Shown: positions 30,472-52,794, numbered from the whole stretch's first letter. The stretch is DNA of 63,770 nucleotides, filler included, from Octopus bimaculoides (GCF_001194135.2; 5 parts of 5 records of this genome joined end to end with filler, not necessarily neighbours in it); one strand, 5' to 3'. Program-made: numbers and translations. The notes: a model not told the origin generated them from the sequence alone.

Positions 30472-30783
30472 CCCCAAAGCTTTACAACAGGTGCTGGTGT
30501 ATTTATATAGCCATAACTTATCGGTTCGGTAAAAGTTACCGATACATAAGTGCAGGGTTTAAAAAAAACAAATTAATAGTGTCGATTATTCAACTAAAAA
30601 TTCTTCAAGGTGGGGCTCCAGCTTGGCCTCAGTCCAATGAGAGAAACAAATGATATATATATTGCCTCTCTTAGGTACATCTCATTGACAAGTCAAAAAA
30701 CTCGAAACATCGATGTCTGGGATTCCTAACAGACGGCAACACTGAACGAACTGAGTGGTTTTATATCTTTTTACCATATGAAA

Positions 30784-36771: not shown

Positions 36772-37462
36772 CATACATACATACATACATACATACATGT
36801 GATCGCACCATCTTCACAGACGATTGCTGTCACCTTGTACTTCCTCATTGTCAATAACGATTTCTGACATTCCGTCCATGACTTCTCAGAGGACTATTCA
36901 GTCCCATTGCAGCTCTGCACGATTTGAAGGATATGTGACCGACGAAATTTGTAACTTATTGATTGTACAGTTACAACTGGTTTGATCGCTATTTTTCCAT
37001 TGCCATAGAACTTTAGAGGATGGAGTGACGAATGAGGTCACCATAAAGTGAAATTGAATTATAGTGATTAAACACTTGTACAACATGAATACCACTCTCT
37101 GAGTCACCGTGAGCAGAAGCTAATAACAGAAGGAAGGGCGATGGCTAGCAATCACATGAAACTGTAGGTTTAACATCAGAGTGTCTCACTCATAGAAGGA
37201 TGCTGTGACTTTAAACTGCATTCAGTAGTTGGATTCTTGTTCGGGACTATCAGGGTTTTGAGAGGAATGAAACCACGTTTCAGACACTATTATTCGCAGG
37301 TCTAATCTGACGCGGAATAGTGGCAGCTGCTGGGGTCCAATCTATGGATTAACTAGCGTATGTGATGACAATCCATCTGAGCGCGGAGACACAGAAATAC
37401 CTTTGGTTGGTGTTAGGGTATGCAGTTAAACACACACGCATCTACATACATACATACATACA

Positions 37463-37489
<27 letters not shown>

Positions 37490-37493
<4 letters not shown>

Positions 37494-37680
37494 CCACATC
37501 ATAAGTAGTTGTCTGAAAATGTCATCACGGTATTATCTACCGATGAGACATGATGCTGTAGCTAGGACACTCTGTAATGAAATCCGTCGGAAAGATAACC
37601 TCGAGGACAAAGAAATAAGAACCCACAGTATGGTAGAAGCCATAGCCACTCATAATAAAAGGAAGTACTGGTGTAATAAA
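37490..37680 (+). mobile_element. R4/Dong-like RLE LINE fragment (copy 1)
   Basis: HIISSCLKMSSRYYLPMRHDAVAR..., nearly identical to the copy at 41850-42850; starts directly after (TACA)n. Confidence 0.85.
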
Positions 37681-38316
37681 AAAAAACACTTAAGGGATAT
37701 TAAATATCCGAAGAACTTACTGGTTTTTATTACCTATATCAATAACAATGTTATTCCAATAGGTAACTAAATAAAAAATAAACATACATATAAATATAGA
37801 TAAGAAATGGAAAACAAAACAATAAATTGAACAATTATAAATTCAACTCAATTTAAATATTTNNNNNNNNNNNNNNNNNNNNNNNNNNNNNNNNNNNNNN
37901 NNNNNNNNNNNNNNNNNNNNNNNNNNNNNNNNNNNNNNNNNNNNNNNNNNNNNNNNNNNNNNNNNNNNNNNNNNNNNNNNNNNNNNNNNNNNNNNNNNNN
38001 NNNNNNNNNNNNNNNNNNNNNNNNNNNNNNNNNNNNNNNNNNNNNNNNNNNNNNNNNNNNNNNNNNNNNNNNNNNNNNNNNNNNNNNNNNNNNNNNNNNN
38101 NNNNNNNNNNNNNNNNNNNNNNNNNNNNNNNNNNNNNNNNNNNNNNNNNNNNNNNNNNNNNNNNNNNNNNNNNNNNNNNNNNNNNNNNNNNNNNNNNNNN
38201 NNNNNNNNNNNNNNNNNNNNNNNNNNNNNNNNNNNNNNNNNNNNNNNNNNNNNNNNNNNNNNNNNNNNNNNNNNNNNNNNNNNNNNNNNNNNNNNNNNNN
38301 NNNNNNNNNNNNNNNN

Positions 38317-38356
<40 letters not shown>

Positions 38357-38548
38357 TTGATACCCCACCATCGCTTGACAACCGATGTTGGTGTGTTTAC
38401 GTACCCGTAACATAGCGGATCGGCCAAAGAGATCGACAGAATAAGTACTAGGCTTACAAAGAATAAGTCCTGGGGTCGATTTGTTCGACTAAAGGCCGTG
38501 CTCCAGCATGGCTGTAGTCAAATGACTGAAACAAATAAAAAAATAAAA
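38357..38548 (+). mobile_element. SINE family A 3' half
   Basis: Matches 27783-27972. Confidence 0.9.
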
Positions 38549-38549
38549 G

Positions 38550-38750
38550 AATATCTAGATATGCAACTATATTCATGAGAATACATACACACATACATAC
38601 ATACATACATACATACATACATACATACATACATACATACAAAAATACCCTGTTGTTGATGTTGTAATTCCAATGAAGAAACCTTGGATTTAGCTTAGAA
38701 ACCGGCTCTTTCTCTATTGGCAAGAAATCTTGAAATAAAACTGAACAATG
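38550..38750 (+). mobile_element. R4/Dong-like LINE 3' UTR (copy 2)
   Basis: ATATCTAGATATGCAACTATAT matches the post-stop sequence at 42805-42825. GAAACCGGCTC is shared with the 3' UTR at 41770. Followed by (CATA)n. Confidence 0.7.
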
Positions 38751-38814
38751 ACATACATACATACGTACGTACGTACGTACATACATACAGACAGACGTAC
38801 ATACGTACGTAGAG

Positions 38815-38985
38815 ACACGCATACAATCTGTAAGTGGAACAGTAAAACTGTGCAAGACTTTCCACAAGTTTAATATGTGACATTGTACTTATCAACATTC
38901 CAGGGATGGAGCTTTGTATCTTTGTTAAAATCTAGCTCCTTCCTCAGAGGAAGAATTTAAATATTTAAAAACAGAAGAGAACATA
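38815..38985 (+). mobile_element. R4/Dong-like LINE extreme 3' end (copy 3)
   Basis: IQSVSGTVKLCKTFHKFNM* (cf. IQSITGTVKICKTFWKFII* at 42740-42792) plus a 3' UTR homologous to 41715-41825. Confidence 0.8.
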
Positions 38986-39044
38986 TATAGACACATATAT
39001 CTAGATAAATAAACAGGTGTATGTGTATACATACATACATACAT

Positions 39045-40747
39045 ACAAGCATACAAGCACCTGGGGTTACCAACAAAGAGAGGGTGACCCGAGAATATTA
39101 CGCCAGACTTAGAAAAATATAGCTGTTGGAGTACTCCTTTTACAACATGCGGTTCTGATACCATCATTTGGGATATTTGACTGACATGCAGAGGAAATTC
39201 ACTCCATAGACATTAAGACCCGCTAGATCTTGACATCACCTGGGAACTTCCATAGAGACAGTGATGAAGAAGAGGCTAAGGAGGAAGAGTCTTAAGGTCA
39301 GTGAAGCCAGTCTTCGAATGTCGTACAGTATCTCTCAGACAACACCTGCAAAAATAAATATATGAACCTATTCCTGAAAAGCAAAGGAAACAACAGTCTA
39401 CGTATTGGCAGTGAGCTCCTCGGGGAATACTCTGTTCCTAGAGACCTTCCGTACAACCACAAAGCAGTTGGACTAACATACTTCAAAGCAATTAGACTAA
39501 TATACCCCAAAGAAAACATGTTTGAGAAGCATTCAACAAACCGAAAATTGACTCTGCTTGATTATATTTTCCGAATACTTGATGATGACTGTTATATATT
39601 CTTTTGTTCTTTGTGGGATAATAAACAACTCACTGAAGGCATGTTATATTTCTACGTGTTTACTTTATTTGACATGTTTACAAACAGTGTCTATAGCGGA
39701 GTGATACACGCTGTGCGTATCTGCCTTAAACACAGTTCATACTGCTTAGTAGATGCGCTTAACGAAATAGTACTACTAGTGAAGATGTATTCATATATAC
39801 GTATACCTATGCATGCACATAGATATGAACATATCACAATGACATTGATATCAACATGAAGTACAACCTCTCTTGGACTCGCGACCGCTACATCACATCA
39901 CGCGTCGAGATAATGAAAGATTAGGAGATTGCTACAAAATACCCATTAAACAAAAGAGTTATTGGAGCCATTAAAGCCCTAAAGTGTAACCAGAAATGTC
40001 AATTATGTCATATTTCTATTGAAGACTTTCACATTACACTTGTGGTCAGTAGCTGCACAGAATGCCATCAAGATATTACCTTCGAATACAACATGACGTT
40101 GTCGCTAAAACAATTTACAACACTGCCATGAGATAAATGCAGAAAATCGTCCTGCTATTGAATACATATATAGGTTTGGCCAAAAATCACCTGAAAGTAA
40201 ATCAAAACCATTTAATTCCAAGATTTATTTATGTTTAACATCTGAATGAATTTAATAAAAGCATCTAAATATGAGACATGATGCAAATTGTTCAAACTGA
40301 AGTCCTTTTTGAGTGACACATTTTTTCCATTCGAGTCAATACAGAATTATAGATAGTATCTATGGAATTTTGATTTACTGTAGGGTGATTTTGGGCCAAC
40401 CCTATATAAACAGCAACACAAGAAACGTTGGCGGAAAATTCCCATCAAAACTACGAAGGCTTGAGACAGACAAAAAAACGTATGTGACGTCAAAGATGTC
40501 AAGTACTCTGCTGATGTGAATATCTCCTCGAGAATTAAAGAGATAGAGGAGAACTTCGGACAACTGTTTTGAAACCTGTTTATATACTGAGATCATAAAT
40601 TCACGTTTATACCAATACAATCTGTAAGCGGAACTGCAAAAGTATACAATGTTTTCTCGAGTAAATACAACATATAACATTGCTTTTGTTATCTACATTC
40701 CACTGATGGAGTTTTAGACACCAGCACCTTCCTTACTAGAAAACGTT

Positions 40748-40750
<3 letters not shown>
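39045..40750 (+). mobile_element. R4/Dong-like LINE, ~1.7-kb degenerate copy with internal insertions (copy 4)
   Basis: Colinear decayed motifs: YKHLG, NKERVTREYYARLRK, EEIHSIDIKTR, GNFHRDSD, LSWTRDRYITS, KCNQKCQLC, KIPIKTT, ADVNIS, QSVSGTAKV, then the 3' UTR. Confidence 0.8.
40167..40407. mobile_element. Tc1/mariner-type MITE (~240 bp) inserted into Dong copy 4
   Basis: TIRs TATAGGTTTGGCCAAAAATCACC / GGTGATTTTGGGCCAACCCTATA, extended by GTAAATCAAAA / TTTTGATTTAC. TA-rich ends. The two flanks rejoin to match the uninterrupted Dong sequence at ~41310-41345. Confidence 0.85.
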
Positions 40751-40793
<43 letters not shown>

Positions 40794-40794
40794 A

Positions 40795-41225
40795 GCCTTC
40801 ATGTTCAGGAGCAAGAGTTAGCGATGGGTGCTAAACACTTGATAAACAAGTGGTAACTAACAAATCCTTGATCTACAAAAGGAATAACTACTAAATACTC
40901 GAGAAGCAAGTGCGATAGCTACGAAATACTTGATAAATAAGAGAGGCGCTTTTAAGCCCTCACTTGGGAAAATGAATGTCGATTAAGCTATAACTGTATA
41001 GAGTATATCACTTCATCAATAACTGTCAAAAAATTTTCAGGTTTTACCTCCCCATAAAAACATTTCATTCTTACAAAATAACTTTTTACAATAATATCTA
41101 CGGAAATGAGTGTGACATGGTTATACCAAAGGCACTCTTGAACTAGTATTCACATACTTAAAAATAAAGAATACTCGTGGAACATTCCATTAAGACAACA
41201 ACCCAATGCAAATGCAACAGGGTGC
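40795..41225 (+). mobile_element. R4/Dong-like LINE fragment (copy 5), highly degenerate
   Basis: Across frameshifts: HVQEQEL, IATKYLINKR, NECRL, NKEYSWNIP followed by a CKCNR-like segment. Confidence 0.65.
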
Positions 41226-41289
41226 ATTATTCTAGCGCTCATGTATATTTACGTGCTTGTCTATAATTTTAAATGCACATATGCGGATA

Positions 41290-41828
41290 CGACCCTGCAT
41301 ATATATGTTATGGAATACATTCATAAACACCAACTCAAGGAATACTGGTGGAATATTCCCATCCAAACTTCTGTCGAATGTAAACATAGCAGGCCGAATA
41401 TTGTTGTTTGGGACAGAGGGACAAAGGTATGTACCGTCATAGAGGTCAGCTGCTCTGCAGATGTAAATATCTTTTTGAAAGTCAAAGAAAAAGAGGATAT
41501 CTATGGACAACTGTTTCAAAACCTCCAGCTTCTATATCCAGACTATGAATTCATATTCATACCAATAATAATTAGGGCACTGGGTTTTGTTAATAAATGC
41601 TGAAAGGAGGATCTGGATGAACTGGGATTTTCAGGAAGAGAAATCGACCAGCTAATTCGTACATTACAAGTGCAAACTGTGTAAAAATATGCAAGACTTT
41701 TCTCAAGTTCTAAATGTGAATTTGTCTGTGTTAACTACATCCCAAAGATGGACCCTTGTATCTTTGTTGGAAACCGGCTCCCTCTTCAATGGAAGATTTA
41801 TAATAATTTTTAAAAAAACAGAATATAC
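41290..41828 (+). mobile_element. R4/Dong-like LINE RLE domain and 3' UTR (copy 6)
   Basis: KEYWWNIPIQTSVECKHSRPNIVVWDRGTKVCTVIEVSCSADVN...IPIIIRALGFV (PD-(D/E)xK-type RLE); ends in (TACA)n. Confidence 0.9.
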
Positions 41829-41849
41829 ATACATACATACATACATACA

Positions 41850-42860
41850 CGGCCAAGTTTGCGTACATGAGGCTGATAACATCTTAAGACTAGGAAGGAA
41901 GCTCCTTGAGCAACATTCTTTGTCTAATAACCTAGAATACACGCCTAAAGAAGTCACACAACTCAACCGCAACGAATCATCAAATGAAAGGATGAGCCTA
42001 TATGAGCAGAAGGCTATGCATGGATATGTTAGTAGAAAGCTTCGAGATGATAGTAACGTCGATCATCAAAGCAGTTTATCATGGATCAATAGCCGGATTA
42101 CTACCTCCCACTTTGAAGAGTATACGTTTGTAATCCAGGAACAGGAAATATCAACCAAGTACCTGATGCACAAAAGGGACAGAGATGCAAAAAAAGCAGT
42201 AAAGTGTGACAATCGATGCAGACTTTGTGGAGTCAGTATCGCAAACATCACCCATATCATAAGTAGTTGCCTGAAAATGTCATCACGGTATTATCTACCG
42301 ATGAGACATGATGTTGTAGCTAGGACACGCTATAATGATATCCGTCGGAAGGAAATAAGAATCCACAGTATGGTAGAAGCCATAGCCACTCATAATAAAA
42401 AGGAGTGCTGGTGGGATGTCCCAGTGAAGACCCCAATAAAATGTAAGCACAATAGATCTGATATAATGATTTGGGATAGAGAAGAGAAACTGTGTACAGT
42501 TGTGGAAACCAGCTGCCCGACGGATGTTAACATAAAGCGGTAGATCAGTGGAAAAGAGAATAGCTTCGCTGAACTATTGAGAAATCTGAAGTTACTCTAT
42601 TCCAGATGACAAGTTCAAGTATATACTTGTAATTATTGGGGCCCTGGGATATGTATCACACTGCTTAAATACCAATTTTGAGAAATTAGGCTTCTCAAAA
42701 CCAGAAAGGAGAAAGCTAATTCAAAGACTACAGATCCAATCCATCACTGGAACTGTAAAAATCTGTAAAACTTTCTGGAAGTTTATCATTTAGATATATG
42801 AGCATATCTAGATATGCAACTATATGCATGAAAATCTACACATATGCATACATACATACA
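41850..42860 (+). mobile_element. R4/Dong-like LINE 3' kilobase (copy 7), best preserved
   Basis: AMHGYV, IQEQEISTKY, zinc knuckle CRLC..ITHIISSC, RHDVVA, RLE region WWDVPVKT..KHNRSDIMIWDREEKLCTVVETSCP, then IIGALGYV...TVKICKTFWKFII*. Flanked by (TACA)n on both sides. Confidence 0.92.
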
Positions 42861-43126
42861 TGATGCCCATCTCTGTATGTGTATANNNNNNNNNNNNNNN
42901 NNNNNNNNNNNNNNNNNNNNNNNNNNNNNNNNNNNNNNNNNNNNNNNNNNNNNNNNNNNNNNNNNNNNNNNNNNNNNNNNNNNNNNNNNNNNNNNNNNNN
43001 NNNNNNNNNNNNNNNNNNNNNNNNNNNNNNNNNNNNNNNNNNNNNNNNNNNNNNNNNNNNNNNNNNNNNNNNNNNNNNNATATATAAATATATATATATA
43101 TATATGTATGTATATATATATATATC

Positions 43127-43760: not shown

Positions 43761-44359
43761 GATCTTTTTTAAAACGGGGGCCATATTTTTCATTAACGAA
43801 ACACTTTGAAACTTGGAACACTGGTAGAATGTGTCATATAAAACATCTTTTTCTCTTAGTCTTCTTTAAAAAAAATAGAAACCCATAACTTATTCCATGT
43901 TAAAGTTGTCGTATTTCTGTAATTTCAACCAATCACTGACGTCCATTCAGCCGATATACATTAAGTGCCGACTACATAAACAAACGATTCTGAAACAATT
44001 AACCCTAACCTTAACCCTAACCCTAACCCTAGGGTTAGGGTTAGGGTTAGGGTTAGGGTTAGGGTTAAAGCAAATTTAAAATGAAAAAAGCAAATAAAAC
44101 GAAGGTATGGAGATTAAATACGCTTTACATCGCTTAATCAGCCAAAGGAGTAAATATAAACAACTGAATACTTGTCAGTGATTGGTTGAAATTATCGAAA
44201 TAAGACAATTTTTTTACATGAAATAAATTCGAATACAAAAATATTTTTCTGTTCTATAACACAAAATAGATAAGTATACGAAGTTTGAAAGTCTTTCCGT
44301 ACTAAAAACACTACGTAAAACATTAATGAAAAATGTGGCCCCCGTTTTAAAATAGATCC
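43761..44359. mobile_element. Merlin-type MITE (599 bp) with central telomeric-repeat palindrome
   Basis: TIRs GGATCTTTTTTAAAACGGGGGCCA / TGGCCCCCGTTTTAAAATAGATCC. Flanks CATATTTT(T) / CATATTTT(A), consistent with an 8-9-bp TSD. Internal inverted repeat TTTCAACCAATCACTGAC / GTCAGTGATTGGTTGAAA. Confidence 0.85.
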
Positions 44360-45748: not shown

Positions 45749-45989
45749 GTATATATAGAAAACGACAATATGTATTTTAAAATATGCACCAGGTGTCAGC
45801 GTGGGAGCTTAGCTATGTGGTTACTTCGTTTTATCAAATGTCTAAGTAGGTGTTTCAAACTTGTGCCACCAAAAGCGCAACCTCCCGCACTCTTTTTCCT
45901 GTTCCCCCCCACAGATTCTTTTTCTATCATCATTACTCATTTTAGTTCAAATAGTGAAGGGGAAACAACCAATCGGAACTCTTTTGTTA

Positions 45990-51373: not shown

Positions 51374-52086
51374 GTCTGTCTTCCTTTCTCTCCTTATCTC
51401 TCTCTTCTTTTCGCTGTTGGTACTGCCAGGCATTATTTAGGACATTTAAGGAAAAAAAAAAAACATCTACTGACAACAATTGTGTTACTTTTTCACGTAC
51501 GTAAAGTTTAACTGAAATTTCTATTATAATTCCTGCAAAGTTAGGTAATAATTCAGGTTTTTCTATTGATTTTAGAATTAATCAGAAAGAAAATTACGTA
51601 TGGCTATGTGCGTGCTCTTCGGAGAAAAACAACATTTTTACATACTCAAATGTCTAAAAATGAAACNNNNNNNNNNNNNNNNNNNNNNNNNNNNNNNNNN
51701 NNNNNNNNNNNNNNNNNNNNNNNNNNNNNNNNNNNNNNNNNNNNNNNNNNNNNNNNNNNNNNNNNNNNNNNNNNNNNNNNNNNNNNNNNNNNNNNNNNNN
51801 NNNNNNNNNNNNNNNNNNNNNNNNNNNNNNNNNNNNNNNNNNNNNNNNNNNNNNNNNNNNNNNNNNNNNNNNNNNNNNNNNNNNNNNNNNNNNNNNNNNN
51901 NNNNNNNNNNNNNNNNNNNNNNNNNNNNNNNNNNNNNNNNNNNNNNNNNNNNNNNNNNNNNNNNNNNNNNNNNNNNNNNNNNNNNNNNNNNNNNNNNNNN
52001 NNNNNNNNNNNNNNNNNNNNNNNNNNNNNNNNNNNNNNNNNNNNNNNNNNNNNNNNNNNNNNNNNNNNNNNNTATATATATATATA

Positions 52087-52260
52087 TCGCTTGACAACCG
52101 ATGGTGGTGTGTTTGCGTCTCCGTAACTTAGCGGTTCGGCAAAAGAGACGATAGAATAAGTACTAGGCATCCAAAGAATAAGTCCTGGGGTCAGTTTGCT
52201 CGACTAAAGGCGGTGCTCCAGCATGGCCGCAGTCAAATGACTGAAACAAGTAAAAGAGTA
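52087..52260 (+). mobile_element. SINE family A 3' half
   Basis: Well-conserved tail ending AAATGACTGAAACAAGTAAAAGAGTA. Confidence 0.9.
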
Positions 52261-52794
52261 AAAATTAGTAATAACAAAATATAATACAGGAGTGTCTTCA
52301 AAACTGTCCCAGCTTAGCCGCAGTGCATTTACTGAAACATGAAACGTACACTTTTATCAGGAGCGAGAGTTACAACTTATGCCAAAACACGCAGAACCGT
52401 AAACCGTAAAAATAATTAAGAGACTAGTGGAGGACCTGTTAACAAATGAACGATTGAGCCAGCGAGCGAAGAATCGACGTTATTACAGCACTCATCAAAA
52501 ACAGCAACTAAATGTCTTTTAAATCGTACACTAGTGTATTTATACTGTAAGCTAGCCTACCTGGTATAATCTCATGTGTATTGTGTAAGAAAACAGTGTG
52601 TACGGGACGGCGCCAATAGTTTCAGGTTAATGGAAGAGTCTAGCTGTAAAATTCAGATCTACGAAGTAACCACACGGCTAAGCCCGCACGCAGTAAAACA
52701 CCTTGCAAATTAATCTTATATACATTATACTGTTTAGCATATTTTCGTTATACTTCCGTCCAACACAGTTTTAATGTGTTATTTTGTGGATATA

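What the first reader, a model, noticed from the sequence alone, without database searches (positions are those of the whole stretch)
37440..42860. Same-strand array of ~7 R4/Dong-like RLE retrotransposons mostly spaced by (TACA)n: candidate new microsatellite-targeting, self-seeding element
Seen: seven fragments in 5.4 kb (37490, 38550, 38815, 39045, 40795, 41290, 41850), all on the + strand, from at least two diverged subfamilies. Their 3' UTRs run into (TACA)n/(CATA)n, with (CA)n after copy 4. The 5'-truncated ends of copies 1, 3, 4 and 7 start right after such repeats, and copy 1 has no Dong tail upstream of its (TACA)n. Established: R4-clade elements use a PD-(D/E)xK RLE and are often site-specific (R4 in rDNA, Dong in TAA repeats). 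Inference: this family targets (TACA)n in a fixed orientation, and each insertion leaves a new target, so arrays grow and may feed the genome's large (TACA)n load. I am not aware of a described TACA-specific RLE family, but I could not search for one.
Basis: partly seen in the sequence, partly recalled or inferred. Interest (0 to 1): 0.75.

Follow-up and report, generated by a model that had tools for sequence, protein, structure and literature searches.

The report
LINE array homing to TACA repeats
This stretch of an octopus-like genome is a head-to-tail pile-up of dead, 5'-truncated copies of a Dong/R4-type jumping gene whose relatives in other genomes also sit between (ACAT)n repeats in one orientation, so it most likely homes to that microsatellite: a real but modest extension of a known kind of site-specific retrotransposon.

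Summary
Between 37443 and 42860 there are eight fragments, not seven, of a retrotransposon with a restriction-like endonuclease (RLE). All lie on the + strand. At least two subfamilies are present, and most fragments end in (ACAT)n (= TACA/CATA/ATAC). Five of the eight 5' ends start 0-8 nt after such a repeat (chance about 1e-10).

Relatives from about 290 kb of other genomes, including an intact copy in the octopod Argonauta hians, show the same anatomy. Full-length and 5'-truncated copies lie between two blocks of one tetranucleotide repeat in a fixed orientation. No neighbouring copy is on the opposite strand. The repeat is (ACAT)n in one set of loci and (ACTT)n, (ACTG)n or (AAGT)n in others.

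The C-terminal half folds like R2 protein, including its nuclease.

I conclude that this is a Dong/R4-like LINE lineage that integrates into (ACAT)n and regenerates it. Four points were not tested:
- genome-wide junction statistics in this genome;
- clade placement by reverse transcriptase (RT) phylogeny;
- any contribution to the genome's (TACA)n load.

Dong-R4 LINEs are already catalogued in cephalopods. Only the (ACAT)n target appears undocumented in the papers I could search; Repbase and Dfam could not be checked.

The parts
37443..37492 (+). (TACA)12.5 microsatellite directly upstream of fragment F1. No family sequence lies upstream of it. Candidate remnant of the original target.
37493..37685 (+). 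F1: fragment truncated at both ends. It covers the CCHC knuckle to the 'EYWWN' region (HMM 972-1033) and has no stops. It is 83% identical to F7. Homology ends in an A-rich stretch 177 nt before the assembly gap.
37863..38316 (.). Assembly gap. Continuity and orientation of the left contig (which carries F1) relative to the rest of the array are unverified.
38548..38641 (+). F2: the last 35 nt of a subfamily-A 3' UTR (38548-38582, 91% identical to 42801-42835) plus an (ACAT)15 tail (38583-38641). It is preceded by the A-rich end of a SINE-like repeat, not by TACA.
38642..38814 (+). F3: 3' UTR-only fragment (38642-38750, 61-70% identical to the UTRs of F4 and F6) plus a compound ACAT/ACGT/ACAG tail (38751-38814). 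It starts directly after F2's tail.
   Evidence: (family D8)
38815..39046 (+). F4: the last ~20 codons (…SVSGTVKLCKTFHKFN*), a 3' UTR and an (ATAC)5 tail (39026-39046). It starts directly after F3's tail.
39047..40792 (+). F5: the longest fragment (HMM 712-1102). It is degenerate and interrupted by a MITE-like insert at 40167-40408. Its 3' UTR ends in (CA)21 (40750-40792) instead of ACAT. It starts directly after F4's tail.
40793..41285 (+). Only 40956-41198 scores against the family HMM (positions 953-1036, i-E 0.11). It follows the (CA)n tail and is truncated at its 3' end where F6 begins.
41286..41849 (+). F6: 5'-truncated copy (HMM 1014-1142, 155 bits, open frame over the nuclease core), a 3' UTR and an (ATAC)6 tail (41825-41849). 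The exact 5' end is uncertain (41236-41300). It abuts F5b, not a repeat.
41850..42860 (+). F7: the best-preserved copy (HMM ~815-1153), with one stop and one frameshift. It carries CCHC and the nuclease motifs. Its 3' UTR ends in a short CATA run (42836-42860). It starts directly after F6's tail and is 69% identical in protein to O. bimaculoides LOC106878562.

Best explanation
**What it is.** The region is a head-to-tail cluster of dead-on-arrival copies of a single-ORF non-LTR retrotransposon. All copies are 5'-truncated. The full element carries an RT, a CCHC zinc knuckle and a C-terminal PD-(D/E)xK restriction-like endonuclease (RLE). It belongs to the group annotated as Dong-R4 in cephalopods. 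Its RNA ends in (ACAU)n.

**How it most likely works (inferred from how R2 works, not shown here).**
1. The element integrates by target-primed reverse transcription into existing (ACAT)n tracts.
2. The nuclease nicks the bottom strand inside the tract.
3. The (ACAU)n end of the RNA pairs with the nicked (ATGT)n DNA and fixes the orientation.
4. Reverse transcription usually stops early, which gives the 5' truncation.

**Consequence.** Part of the old tract stays at the 5' side, and a new tract, the copied tail, lies at the 3' side. Every copy therefore offers fresh landing sites, and later copies, including copies of other subfamilies, stack up in the same orientation. Later SINE-like and MITE-like insertions and decay have blurred some junctions.
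For: **Window**
- Eight fragments, all on the + strand.
- Five 5' ends lie 0-8 nt after an (ACAT)-type run.
- Truncation points differ (HMM 712, 815, 953, 972, 1014, 1134) and at least two subfamilies are present.

**Relatives: (ACAT)n on both sides, same orientation**
- L003: a 5'-truncated copy lies 2 nt after (ACAT)45, with no family UTR upstream.
- L009: an intact 1172-aa ORF between (ACAT)26 and (ACAT)28.
- L010 shows the same layout.
- L025: an intact 1158-aa ORF.
- L026: a copy inside a compound microsatellite.
- L002: three head-to-tail copies separated by (ACAT)8-31.
- Argonauta hians L024: an intact copy with (ACAT)14 upstream and an ATAC(AC)6 tail.

**Relatives: the same rule with other units**
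- (ACTT)n flanks appear in L004-7, L013, L015 and L018-20.
- L021-23: a solitary truncated copy sits inside (ACTG)30-61/(ACTG)11-51, with different repeat numbers in three samples.
- L018 and L020: two full-length copies at different loci share a 5' UTR that is 89% identical right up to the repeat boundary.

**Orientation and relatedness**
- No minus-strand family hit exists in any of the 26 loci, about 290 kb.
- F7 groups with (ACAT)-flanked L026 in 96 of 100 NJ bootstraps.

**Protein**
- RVT_1 is found in full-length relatives.
- R2 proteins are the best PDB sequence hits, E 1e-26.
- The predicted C-terminal half (pLDDT above 90 over the nuclease) matches R2 structures at E 1e-12 to 1e-10. 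It then matches viral cap-snatching PD-(D/E)xK nucleases.

**Literature**
- RLE LINEs commonly target microsatellites, and Dong targets (TAA)n (PMC4640811, PMC7998251, PMC3812793).
Against: - No genome-wide census, empty-site allele or read support could be obtained for this genome.
- Three window junctions (F2, F5b/F6 and the unassigned start of F5b) are not at ACAT.
- F5 ends in (CA)n, and L018 copy 1 ends in (TAAG)n, the reverse complement of its neighbours' tails. Pairing of an identical tail therefore cannot explain every stacking event.
- Short metagenome contigs such as L009, L010 and L025 may be collapsed arrays. Their upstream repeat could then be a neighbour's tail.
- O. bimaculoides copy L001 has no ACAT flank, although it is truncated at both ends.
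- Whether the nuclease, an N-terminal DNA-binding domain or only RNA/DNA pairing gives the preference is unknown.
- No HDV-like 5' ribozyme was detected.
Confidence: 0.7

Rival explanations
1. One or a few integration events produced several units at once. The reverse transcriptase reached the 5' end of one (often broken) element RNA and jumped end-to-end onto the (ACAU)n 3' end of another element RNA. The result is a concatenated head-to-tail cDNA. The array would then not record repeated homing to earlier tails.
For: - Each internal junction is 'tail of the upstream unit | truncated 5' end of the downstream unit', in one orientation and with mixed subfamilies. This is what template jumping predicts.
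- End-to-end template jumping is an established in-vitro property of R2 reverse transcriptase (Bibillo and Eickbush; from my own knowledge, not checked here).
- Very short units such as F2 (35 nt), F3 and F4 fit broken templates.
Against: - Units differ greatly in decay: F5b is barely recognisable, F5 is degenerate, and F6, F7 and F1 are well preserved. This suggests different ages.
- A SINE-like element and a MITE-like element have inserted between or within some units only.
- Template jumping does not explain solitary copies flanked on both sides by the repeat (L003, L021-23, L026) or full-length copies that start exactly at the repeat.
- It is compatible with targeting rather than a replacement for it.
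Confidence: 0.12
2. There is no target preference. (ACAT)n is only the element's 3' tail, as in many LINEs with microsatellite tails. The cluster reflects passive accumulation of an abundant family in a repeat-rich, weakly selected region.
For: - Dong-R4 LINEs are abundant in octopus genomes (PMC13282606, PMC8967140).
- The 23-kb piece is full of microsatellites and other repeats.
- Some (ACAT)n runs in the piece have no family fragment next to them.
- L001 has no ACAT flank.
Against: - Passive accumulation predicts random orientation and random 5' junctions.
- Observed instead: every neighbouring copy is on the same strand in the window and in L002, L018, L019 and L020 (about 13 of 13, P about 1e-4).
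- 5' ends lie 0-8 nt after the repeat (P about 1e-10 in the window).
- Solitary copies are embedded in long repeats on both sides.
Confidence: 0.08
3. The array is secondary. It arose by tandem segmental duplication or unequal crossing-over between repeats, or it is a mis-assembly that chains unrelated repeat-ended contigs through microsatellites in a short-read scaffold.
For: - The piece carries four assembly gaps. One lies inside the finding and one lies 25 nt after its last tail.
- All internal joins run through simple repeats.
- Read support could not be checked.
Against: - Units have different truncation points, lengths and subfamilies, share no breakpoints, and are only 61-83% identical. 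This is not a duplication series.
- F2 to F7 lie in one gap-free contig, and its joining repeats are only 21-64 nt long.
- The same architecture occurs in gap-free contigs of up to 4.5 Mb from other genomes (L002, L018-L020, L026).
Confidence: 0.05

Closest known systems
Dong (Bombyx mori) and Dong-like elements of insects, molluscs and cnidarians, R4 clade
   Same: - Single-ORF LINE with RT, a CCHC knuckle and a C-terminal restriction-like endonuclease.
- No N-terminal zinc fingers detected.
- Inserts into a microsatellite in a fixed orientation and carries the same repeat at its 3' end.
- Cephalopod copies of this kind are labelled LINE/Dong-R4 in published annotations (PMC7998251, PMC3812793, PMC13282606).
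   Different: [quoted passage not shown]
- Here the flanks are (ACAT)n; in sister lineages they are (ACTT)n, (ACTG)n or (AAGT)n.
- Only one relative (L007) has a (TAA)17 5' flank.
- Placement next to Dong by RT phylogeny was not tested.
- The HDV-like 5' ribozyme shown for Dong (PMC3774820) was not detected.
R4 of Ascaris and other nematodes
   Same: Same clade label and the same domain order. It is also site-specific.
   Different: R4 targets a site in the 28S rRNA gene, not a microsatellite. No rDNA is present in the window.
Waldo (WaldoAg1/2, WaldoFs1), R1 clade
   Same: Targets ACAY microsatellites, which include ACAT (PMC3812793).
   Different: - Waldo uses an N-terminal apurinic/apyrimidinic-type endonuclease and has two ORFs.
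- The present family has no Exo_endo_phos domain and has a C-terminal RLE.
- The similarity is a convergent choice of target, not relatedness.
Togen ((TG)n-specific, NeSL-related) and microsatellite-specific HERO families
   Same: RLE-encoding LINEs that have switched to microsatellite targets (PMC4640811).
   Different: They belong to different clades and use different repeat units. Their relationship to the present family was not tested.
R2 (Bombyx mori, zebra finch, turtle)
   Same: - Best sequence and fold matches among solved structures.
- Same thumb, CCHC and RLE architecture, and a target-primed mechanism.
   Different: - R2 has N-terminal zinc-finger and Myb domains and targets a unique 28S site.
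- Identity to the present family is only 13-15% over the C-terminal half.

Membership tests
RLE-type (R2-supergroup) non-LTR retrotransposon | Reverse transcriptase domain of LINE type | tested here: met
   RVT_1 scores 78-96 bits in all seven full-length relatives scanned. R2 proteins are the best PDB sequence hits, E 1e-26. The window copies themselves are 5'-truncated downstream of the RT catalytic motifs (F5 starts at HMM 712). The domain is therefore seen only in relatives.
RLE-type (R2-supergroup) non-LTR retrotransposon | C-terminal CCHC knuckle followed by a PD-(D/E)xK restriction-like endonuclease | tested here: met
   C321, C324, H333 and C338 are invariant or nearly so. P406-D407, E422, D428 and K434/K438 are also invariant or nearly invariant in 15 family proteins. 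F7 keeps CRLC…H…C, RSD, VVETSCPTD and K. The AlphaFold model has pLDDT above 90 over this region. Foldseek matches R2 structures at E 1e-12 to 8e-9 over 440-510 columns, then viral cap-snatching PD-(D/E)xK nucleases. A sequence profile of the C-terminal half alone found no PDB hit.
RLE-type (R2-supergroup) non-LTR retrotransposon | Single long ORF and no LTRs | tested here: met
   Intact ORFs of 1172 aa (L009), 1213 aa (L010) and 1158 aa (L025). L024 gives an uninterrupted 1172-aa match.
R4/Dong clade | RT-domain phylogeny groups it with R4 and Dong rather than R2, HERO, NeSL or CRE | not tested
   No named R4, Dong, Rex6 or HERO reference sequence could be obtained. All three homologue searches returned unnamed proteins, apart from octopod hypothetical proteins. 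The label rests on published RepeatMasker-type annotation of cephalopod genomes (PMC13282606, PMC8967140, PMC9115989).
R4/Dong clade | No N-terminal zinc fingers; a divergent Myb/SANT-like N-terminal domain (PMC7998251) | tested here: inconclusive
   Pfam finds no zinc-finger or Myb domain in the N-terminal 400 aa of seven full-length proteins at E up to 1. A conserved 'RPNRDY…W…E.NKDL…W' block is visible by eye in L009, L024 and L002. It was not scored against a Myb profile.
R4/Dong clade | Site-specific insertion into rDNA or a microsatellite, with the target repeat also at the 3' end | tested here: met
   The same tetranucleotide unit, in the same orientation, lies on both flanks in the window and in about 20 independent copies elsewhere.
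Dong proper | Target and tail are (TAA)n | tested here: not met
   Tails and flanks are (ACAT)n in the window and in L002, L003, L009, L010, L014, L025 and L026. Other relatives have (ACTT)n, (ACTG)n or (AAGT)n. Only the 5' flank of L007 is (AAT)17.
R4/Dong clade | HDV-like self-cleaving ribozyme at the 5' end (PMC3774820) | tested here: inconclusive
   No HDV-type Rfam hit at E up to 1-5 in L002, L003, L004, L009, L010, L015, L020 or L024. Such ribozymes are often missed by covariance models. The window copies lack 5' ends.
Waldo / R1 clade (ACAY-specific) | N-terminal apurinic/apyrimidinic (Exo_endo_phos) endonuclease | tested here: not met
   No Exo_endo_phos domain in any full-length family member. 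The nuclease is C-terminal and of the restriction type.

The most novel reading that the evidence does not exclude
The window samples a widespread, so far undescribed radiation of Dong-like RLE LINEs that has repeatedly switched among tetranucleotide microsatellite targets: (ACAT)n, (ACTT)n, (AAGT)n, (ACTG)n and (ACTC)n. Intact, probably active members exist, including one in the octopod Argonauta. The copied tail acts as the homing signal. The elements would then build same-strand arrays and seed or lengthen a measurable share of the host's tetranucleotide microsatellites. They would also form a natural series of R2-like enzymes with simple, re-targetable DNA sites.
Probability: 0.3. Interest if true: 0.6.

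Novelty: new member of a known kind. Interest (0 to 1): 0.4.

Why it matters
Site-specific RLE LINEs, with R2 as the model, are being developed as tools for inserting DNA without double-strand breaks. How their target choice changes is therefore of practical interest.

A set of related elements that differ mainly in which tetranucleotide repeat they occupy would be a convenient natural series. It could be used to ask whether the RNA tail, the nuclease or an N-terminal domain sets the target.

For cephalopod genomics, this would explain part of the association between Dong-R4 LINEs and (ACAT)n tracts. It would also explain why such regions assemble poorly.

It does not change the picture of how LINEs work. 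Microsatellite homing by this clade has been known since Dong.

Tried and rejected

**Searches that gave nothing useful**
- Clade naming by database names: three homologue searches returned almost only unnamed proteins. RT-phylogeny membership is therefore untested.
- Viral-contig scan: no relative found.
- HDV-like 5' ribozyme: no Rfam hit. The Rfam hits in the window are microsatellite noise (mir-297 and similar, all far below gathering score).
- Sequence-profile search of the C-terminal half against PDB: no hit. A fold search was needed instead.
- Literature: seven searches and about ten papers gave no report of an (ACAT)n-specific R4/Dong element. PMC4400214 is not held. Repbase and Dfam cannot be searched here.
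- Host of L003: its ion-channel gene has no close PDB relative, so I dropped this.

**Ideas tested and rejected**
- F2 is the LINE-derived tail of the adjacent SINE. Rejected, because four other copies of that SINE end before the F2 sequence.
- The sequence upstream of F1's (TACA)n is a Dong 3' UTR. Rejected, because it shows no similarity to any UTR or to the family HMM.
- Tail type follows a clean phylogenetic split. Only partly true. Two (ACAT) subclades have 96-97% bootstrap support. The whole ACAT set has 49% and the ACTT set 12%.

Full report
**Source and setting**

The piece (30409-53742) is repeat-rich animal DNA with four assembly gaps. The best named protein match of the longest frame is an Octopus bimaculoides 'uncharacterized protein' at 69% identity. 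The source is therefore an octopus or a close relative.

Published annotations list Dong-R4 among the most abundant and recently active LINE groups in octopus genomes (PMC13282606, PMC8967140, PMC9115989).

**The observation**

tblastn with homologues and a six-frame scan with an HMM built from 25 family proteins give significant hits only on the + strand and only between 37495 and 42784. With DNA comparisons added, the anatomy is:

| Element | Coordinates | Notes |
|---|---|---|
| (TACA)12.5 | 37443-37492 | upstream of F1 |
| F1 | 37493-37685 | |
| gap | 37863-38316 | |
| SINE-like repeat | 38357-38549 | |
| F2 and tail | 38548-38582; 38583-38641 | tail is (ACAT)15 |
| F3 and tail | 38642-38750; 38751-38814 | UTR only; compound tail |
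| F4 and tail | 38815-39025; 39026-39046 | tail is (ATAC)5 |
| F5 and tail | 39047-40749; 40750-40792 | MITE-like insert at 40167-40408; tail is (CA)21 |
| F5b | 40793-41285 | very degenerate |
| F6 and tail | ~41286-41824; 41825-41849 | tail is (ATAC)6 |
| F7 and tail | 41850-42835; 42836-42860 | short CATA run |
| gap | 42886-43079 | |

- This makes eight fragments rather than seven.
- F1, F2 and F7 form one subfamily (83-93% identical). F3 to F6 form another, looser group (61-80%).
- Five of the eight 5' ends lie 0-8 nt after an (ACAT)-type run, while only 0.45% of positions in the piece do so (P about 1e-10).
- Seven fragments on one strand within one contig has P = 0.016.

**The gaps**

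No frame or homology block touches the gap at 37863-38316. F1 homology stops 177 nt before it. The first 231 nt after it are (TA)10(TG)10 and a SINE-like repeat that has other copies in the window and in O. bimaculoides.

F1 and F2 belong to the same subfamily and are collinear. They could be one copy broken by later insertions if the missing ~390 nt lie in the gap.

F1's junction with its (TACA)n lies within one contig and stands on its own. Whether F1 belongs to the array depends on the scaffold.

**What the protein is**

- Full-length relatives carry RVT_1, and their best PDB sequence hits are R2 proteins (E 1e-26).
- Fifteen family proteins share invariant or nearly invariant C-C-H-C, then P-D, E, D and K residues.
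- An AlphaFold model of the C-terminal 517 aa has mean pLDDT 77.6, with values above 90 over the last 200 residues.
- The model matches R2 structures at Foldseek E 1e-12 to 8e-9 over 440-510 columns. Weaker hits follow to viral cap-snatching PD-(D/E)xK nucleases.
- The fragments are therefore pieces of an R2-supergroup LINE that encodes a restriction-like endonuclease. None of the window copies reaches the RT catalytic region, so all are dead.

**Relatives elsewhere**

I fetched 26 loci, about 290 kb, and mapped family copies and microsatellites.

Copies with (ACAT)n on both sides in the same orientation:
- L003: a copy truncated at aa 759 lies 2 nt after (ACAT)45, with no family UTR upstream.
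- L009: an intact 1172-aa ORF lies between (ACAT)26 and (ACAT)28.
- L010 and L025 show the same layout.
- L026: a full-length copy sits inside a compound (AGAT)/(CCAT)/(ACAT) tract.
- L002: three head-to-tail copies are separated by (ACAT)8, (ACAT)31 and (ACAT)23.
- L014 has the tail only.
- The octopod Argonauta hians carries an intact copy with (ACAT)14 about 820 nt upstream of the ORF and an ATAC(AC)6 tail. That tail recalls the (CA)n tail of F5.

Other relatives obey the same rule with other units:
- (ACTT)n flanks occur in L004-L007, L013, L015 and L018-L020.
- L021-L023: a solitary truncated copy lies between (ACTG)30-61 and (ACTG)11-51, and the repeat number differs among three samples.
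- L018 and L020: full-length copies at different loci have 5' UTRs that are 89% identical right up to the repeat. The element's true 5' end therefore abuts the repeat.

No family hit on the opposite strand exists in any locus. About 13 neighbouring copies are all co-oriented (P about 1e-4).

In a neighbour-joining tree of the C-terminal 196 columns:
- F7 groups with (ACAT)-flanked L026 in 96 of 100 bootstraps;
- L009/L010/L014/L024/L025 group in 97 of 100;
- deeper structure is unresolved.

**Interpretation**

The repeat is both tail and 5' flank, the orientation is fixed, and this holds for solitary copies. The simplest reading is homing to the cognate microsatellite by target-primed reverse transcription, as established for Dong in (TAA)n (PMC7998251, PMC3812793) and, mechanistically, for R2. 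Each insertion recreates the repeat at its 3' end, which explains same-strand stacking.

What is shown: the anatomy, the orientation rule, the conservation across genomes and the enzyme type.

What is inferred: the order of events, which component reads the target, and any effect on the genome's microsatellite content.

**Limits and exceptions**

- Three window junctions are not at ACAT.
- F5 has a (CA)n tail.
- L018 copy 1 has a (TAAG)48 tail followed, in the same orientation, by a fragment with a (CTTA)n tail.
- O. bimaculoides copy L001 has no such flanks.
- Roughly half of the (ACAT)n runs in the piece have no family fragment beside them.
- Specificity is therefore a strong preference, not an absolute rule. 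The 'feeds the genome's TACA load' idea is untested.
- End-to-end template jumping by the reverse transcriptase could make part of such an array in a single event. Unequal decay of neighbouring units argues against it as the sole cause.

**Comparison with known families and novelty**

Microsatellite-specific RLE LINEs are well known: Dong with (TAA)n, Togen with (TG)n, and some HERO families (PMC4640811). ACAY repeats are a known target of the unrelated, APE-type Waldo elements (PMC3812793).

I found no paper describing an (ACAT)n-specific R4/Dong lineage. Repbase and Dfam, where such a note would most likely sit, could not be searched.

Clade membership by RT phylogeny was not tested, because no named reference sequence could be retrieved.

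I therefore file it as a new member of a known kind. It has a different target repeat, and that would make it a variant if the target proves to be unrecorded.

**Verdict**

- The finding is sound and of moderate interest (0.4).

Noticed in passing
window 40167-40408: A ~240-bp insertion inside fragment F5. It has terminal inverted repeats (GGTTTGGCCAAAAATCACC … GGTGATTTTGGGCCAACC) and TATATA on both sides, so it looks like a MITE.
   Followed up: partly
window 38357-38549; also 52086-52263, 30479-30651; L001 3222-3410(-), 18487-18687: A SINE-like dispersed repeat of ~190 nt with an A-rich end. It occurs in three copies in the piece and two in an O. bimaculoides locus (68-89% identical). The 35-nt LINE end F2 follows one copy directly but is not part of the repeat.
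   Followed up: yes
window 44000-44067: (TAACCC)5 runs straight into (TAGGGT)6. This is a head-to-head pair of telomere-type repeats in the interior of the piece.
   Followed up: no
window 52596-52689 (-) and 45801-45892 (+): Vault-RNA-like matches just under Rfam's gathering score (33.4 and 28.8 bits against 34). They could be vault-derived repeats or chance.
   Followed up: no
L018 6836-7168: One copy has a (TAAG)48 tail, the reverse complement of the (CTTA)n tails of its neighbours. A ~110-nt UTR-only fragment with (ACTT)5 follows it in the same orientation. Arrays therefore mix tail types.
   Followed up: partly
L021, L022, L023 (7669-8964): The same 5'-truncated copy inside an (ACTG)n tract appears in three different samples. 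Repeat numbers differ (61/35/30 upstream, 51/11/18 downstream). This is a polymorphic microsatellite around a fixed insertion.
   Followed up: partly
L009 ~135-150, L010 ~125-140, L002 ~885 and ~5690, L024 ~9186: A short (G)ACGTG(T/G) motif lies 5-75 nt downstream of the upstream (ACAT)n in five full-length copies of otherwise unalignable 5' UTRs. It is absent in L025 and L026. It could be a promoter or ribozyme element, or chance.
   Followed up: no
L002 5253-5531 (-): An ORF with an RLE-like C-terminus ('D.ACP.D', 'IVIGSLG') from another family lies in the opposite orientation. Its 3' side abuts the (ACAT)31 tract.
   Followed up: no
L003 943-1056: A potassium-channel RNA-editing hairpin (Rfam K_chan_RES, 72 bits, above the gathering score) lies inside an intronless 638-aa ion-channel gene. 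This is 6 kb from the LINE copy.
   Followed up: no
L001 9600-9900: The O. bimaculoides copy lies next to tandem C2H2 zinc-finger linker sequences (…HTGEKPY…). It is truncated at both ends and has no ACAT flanks.
   Followed up: no
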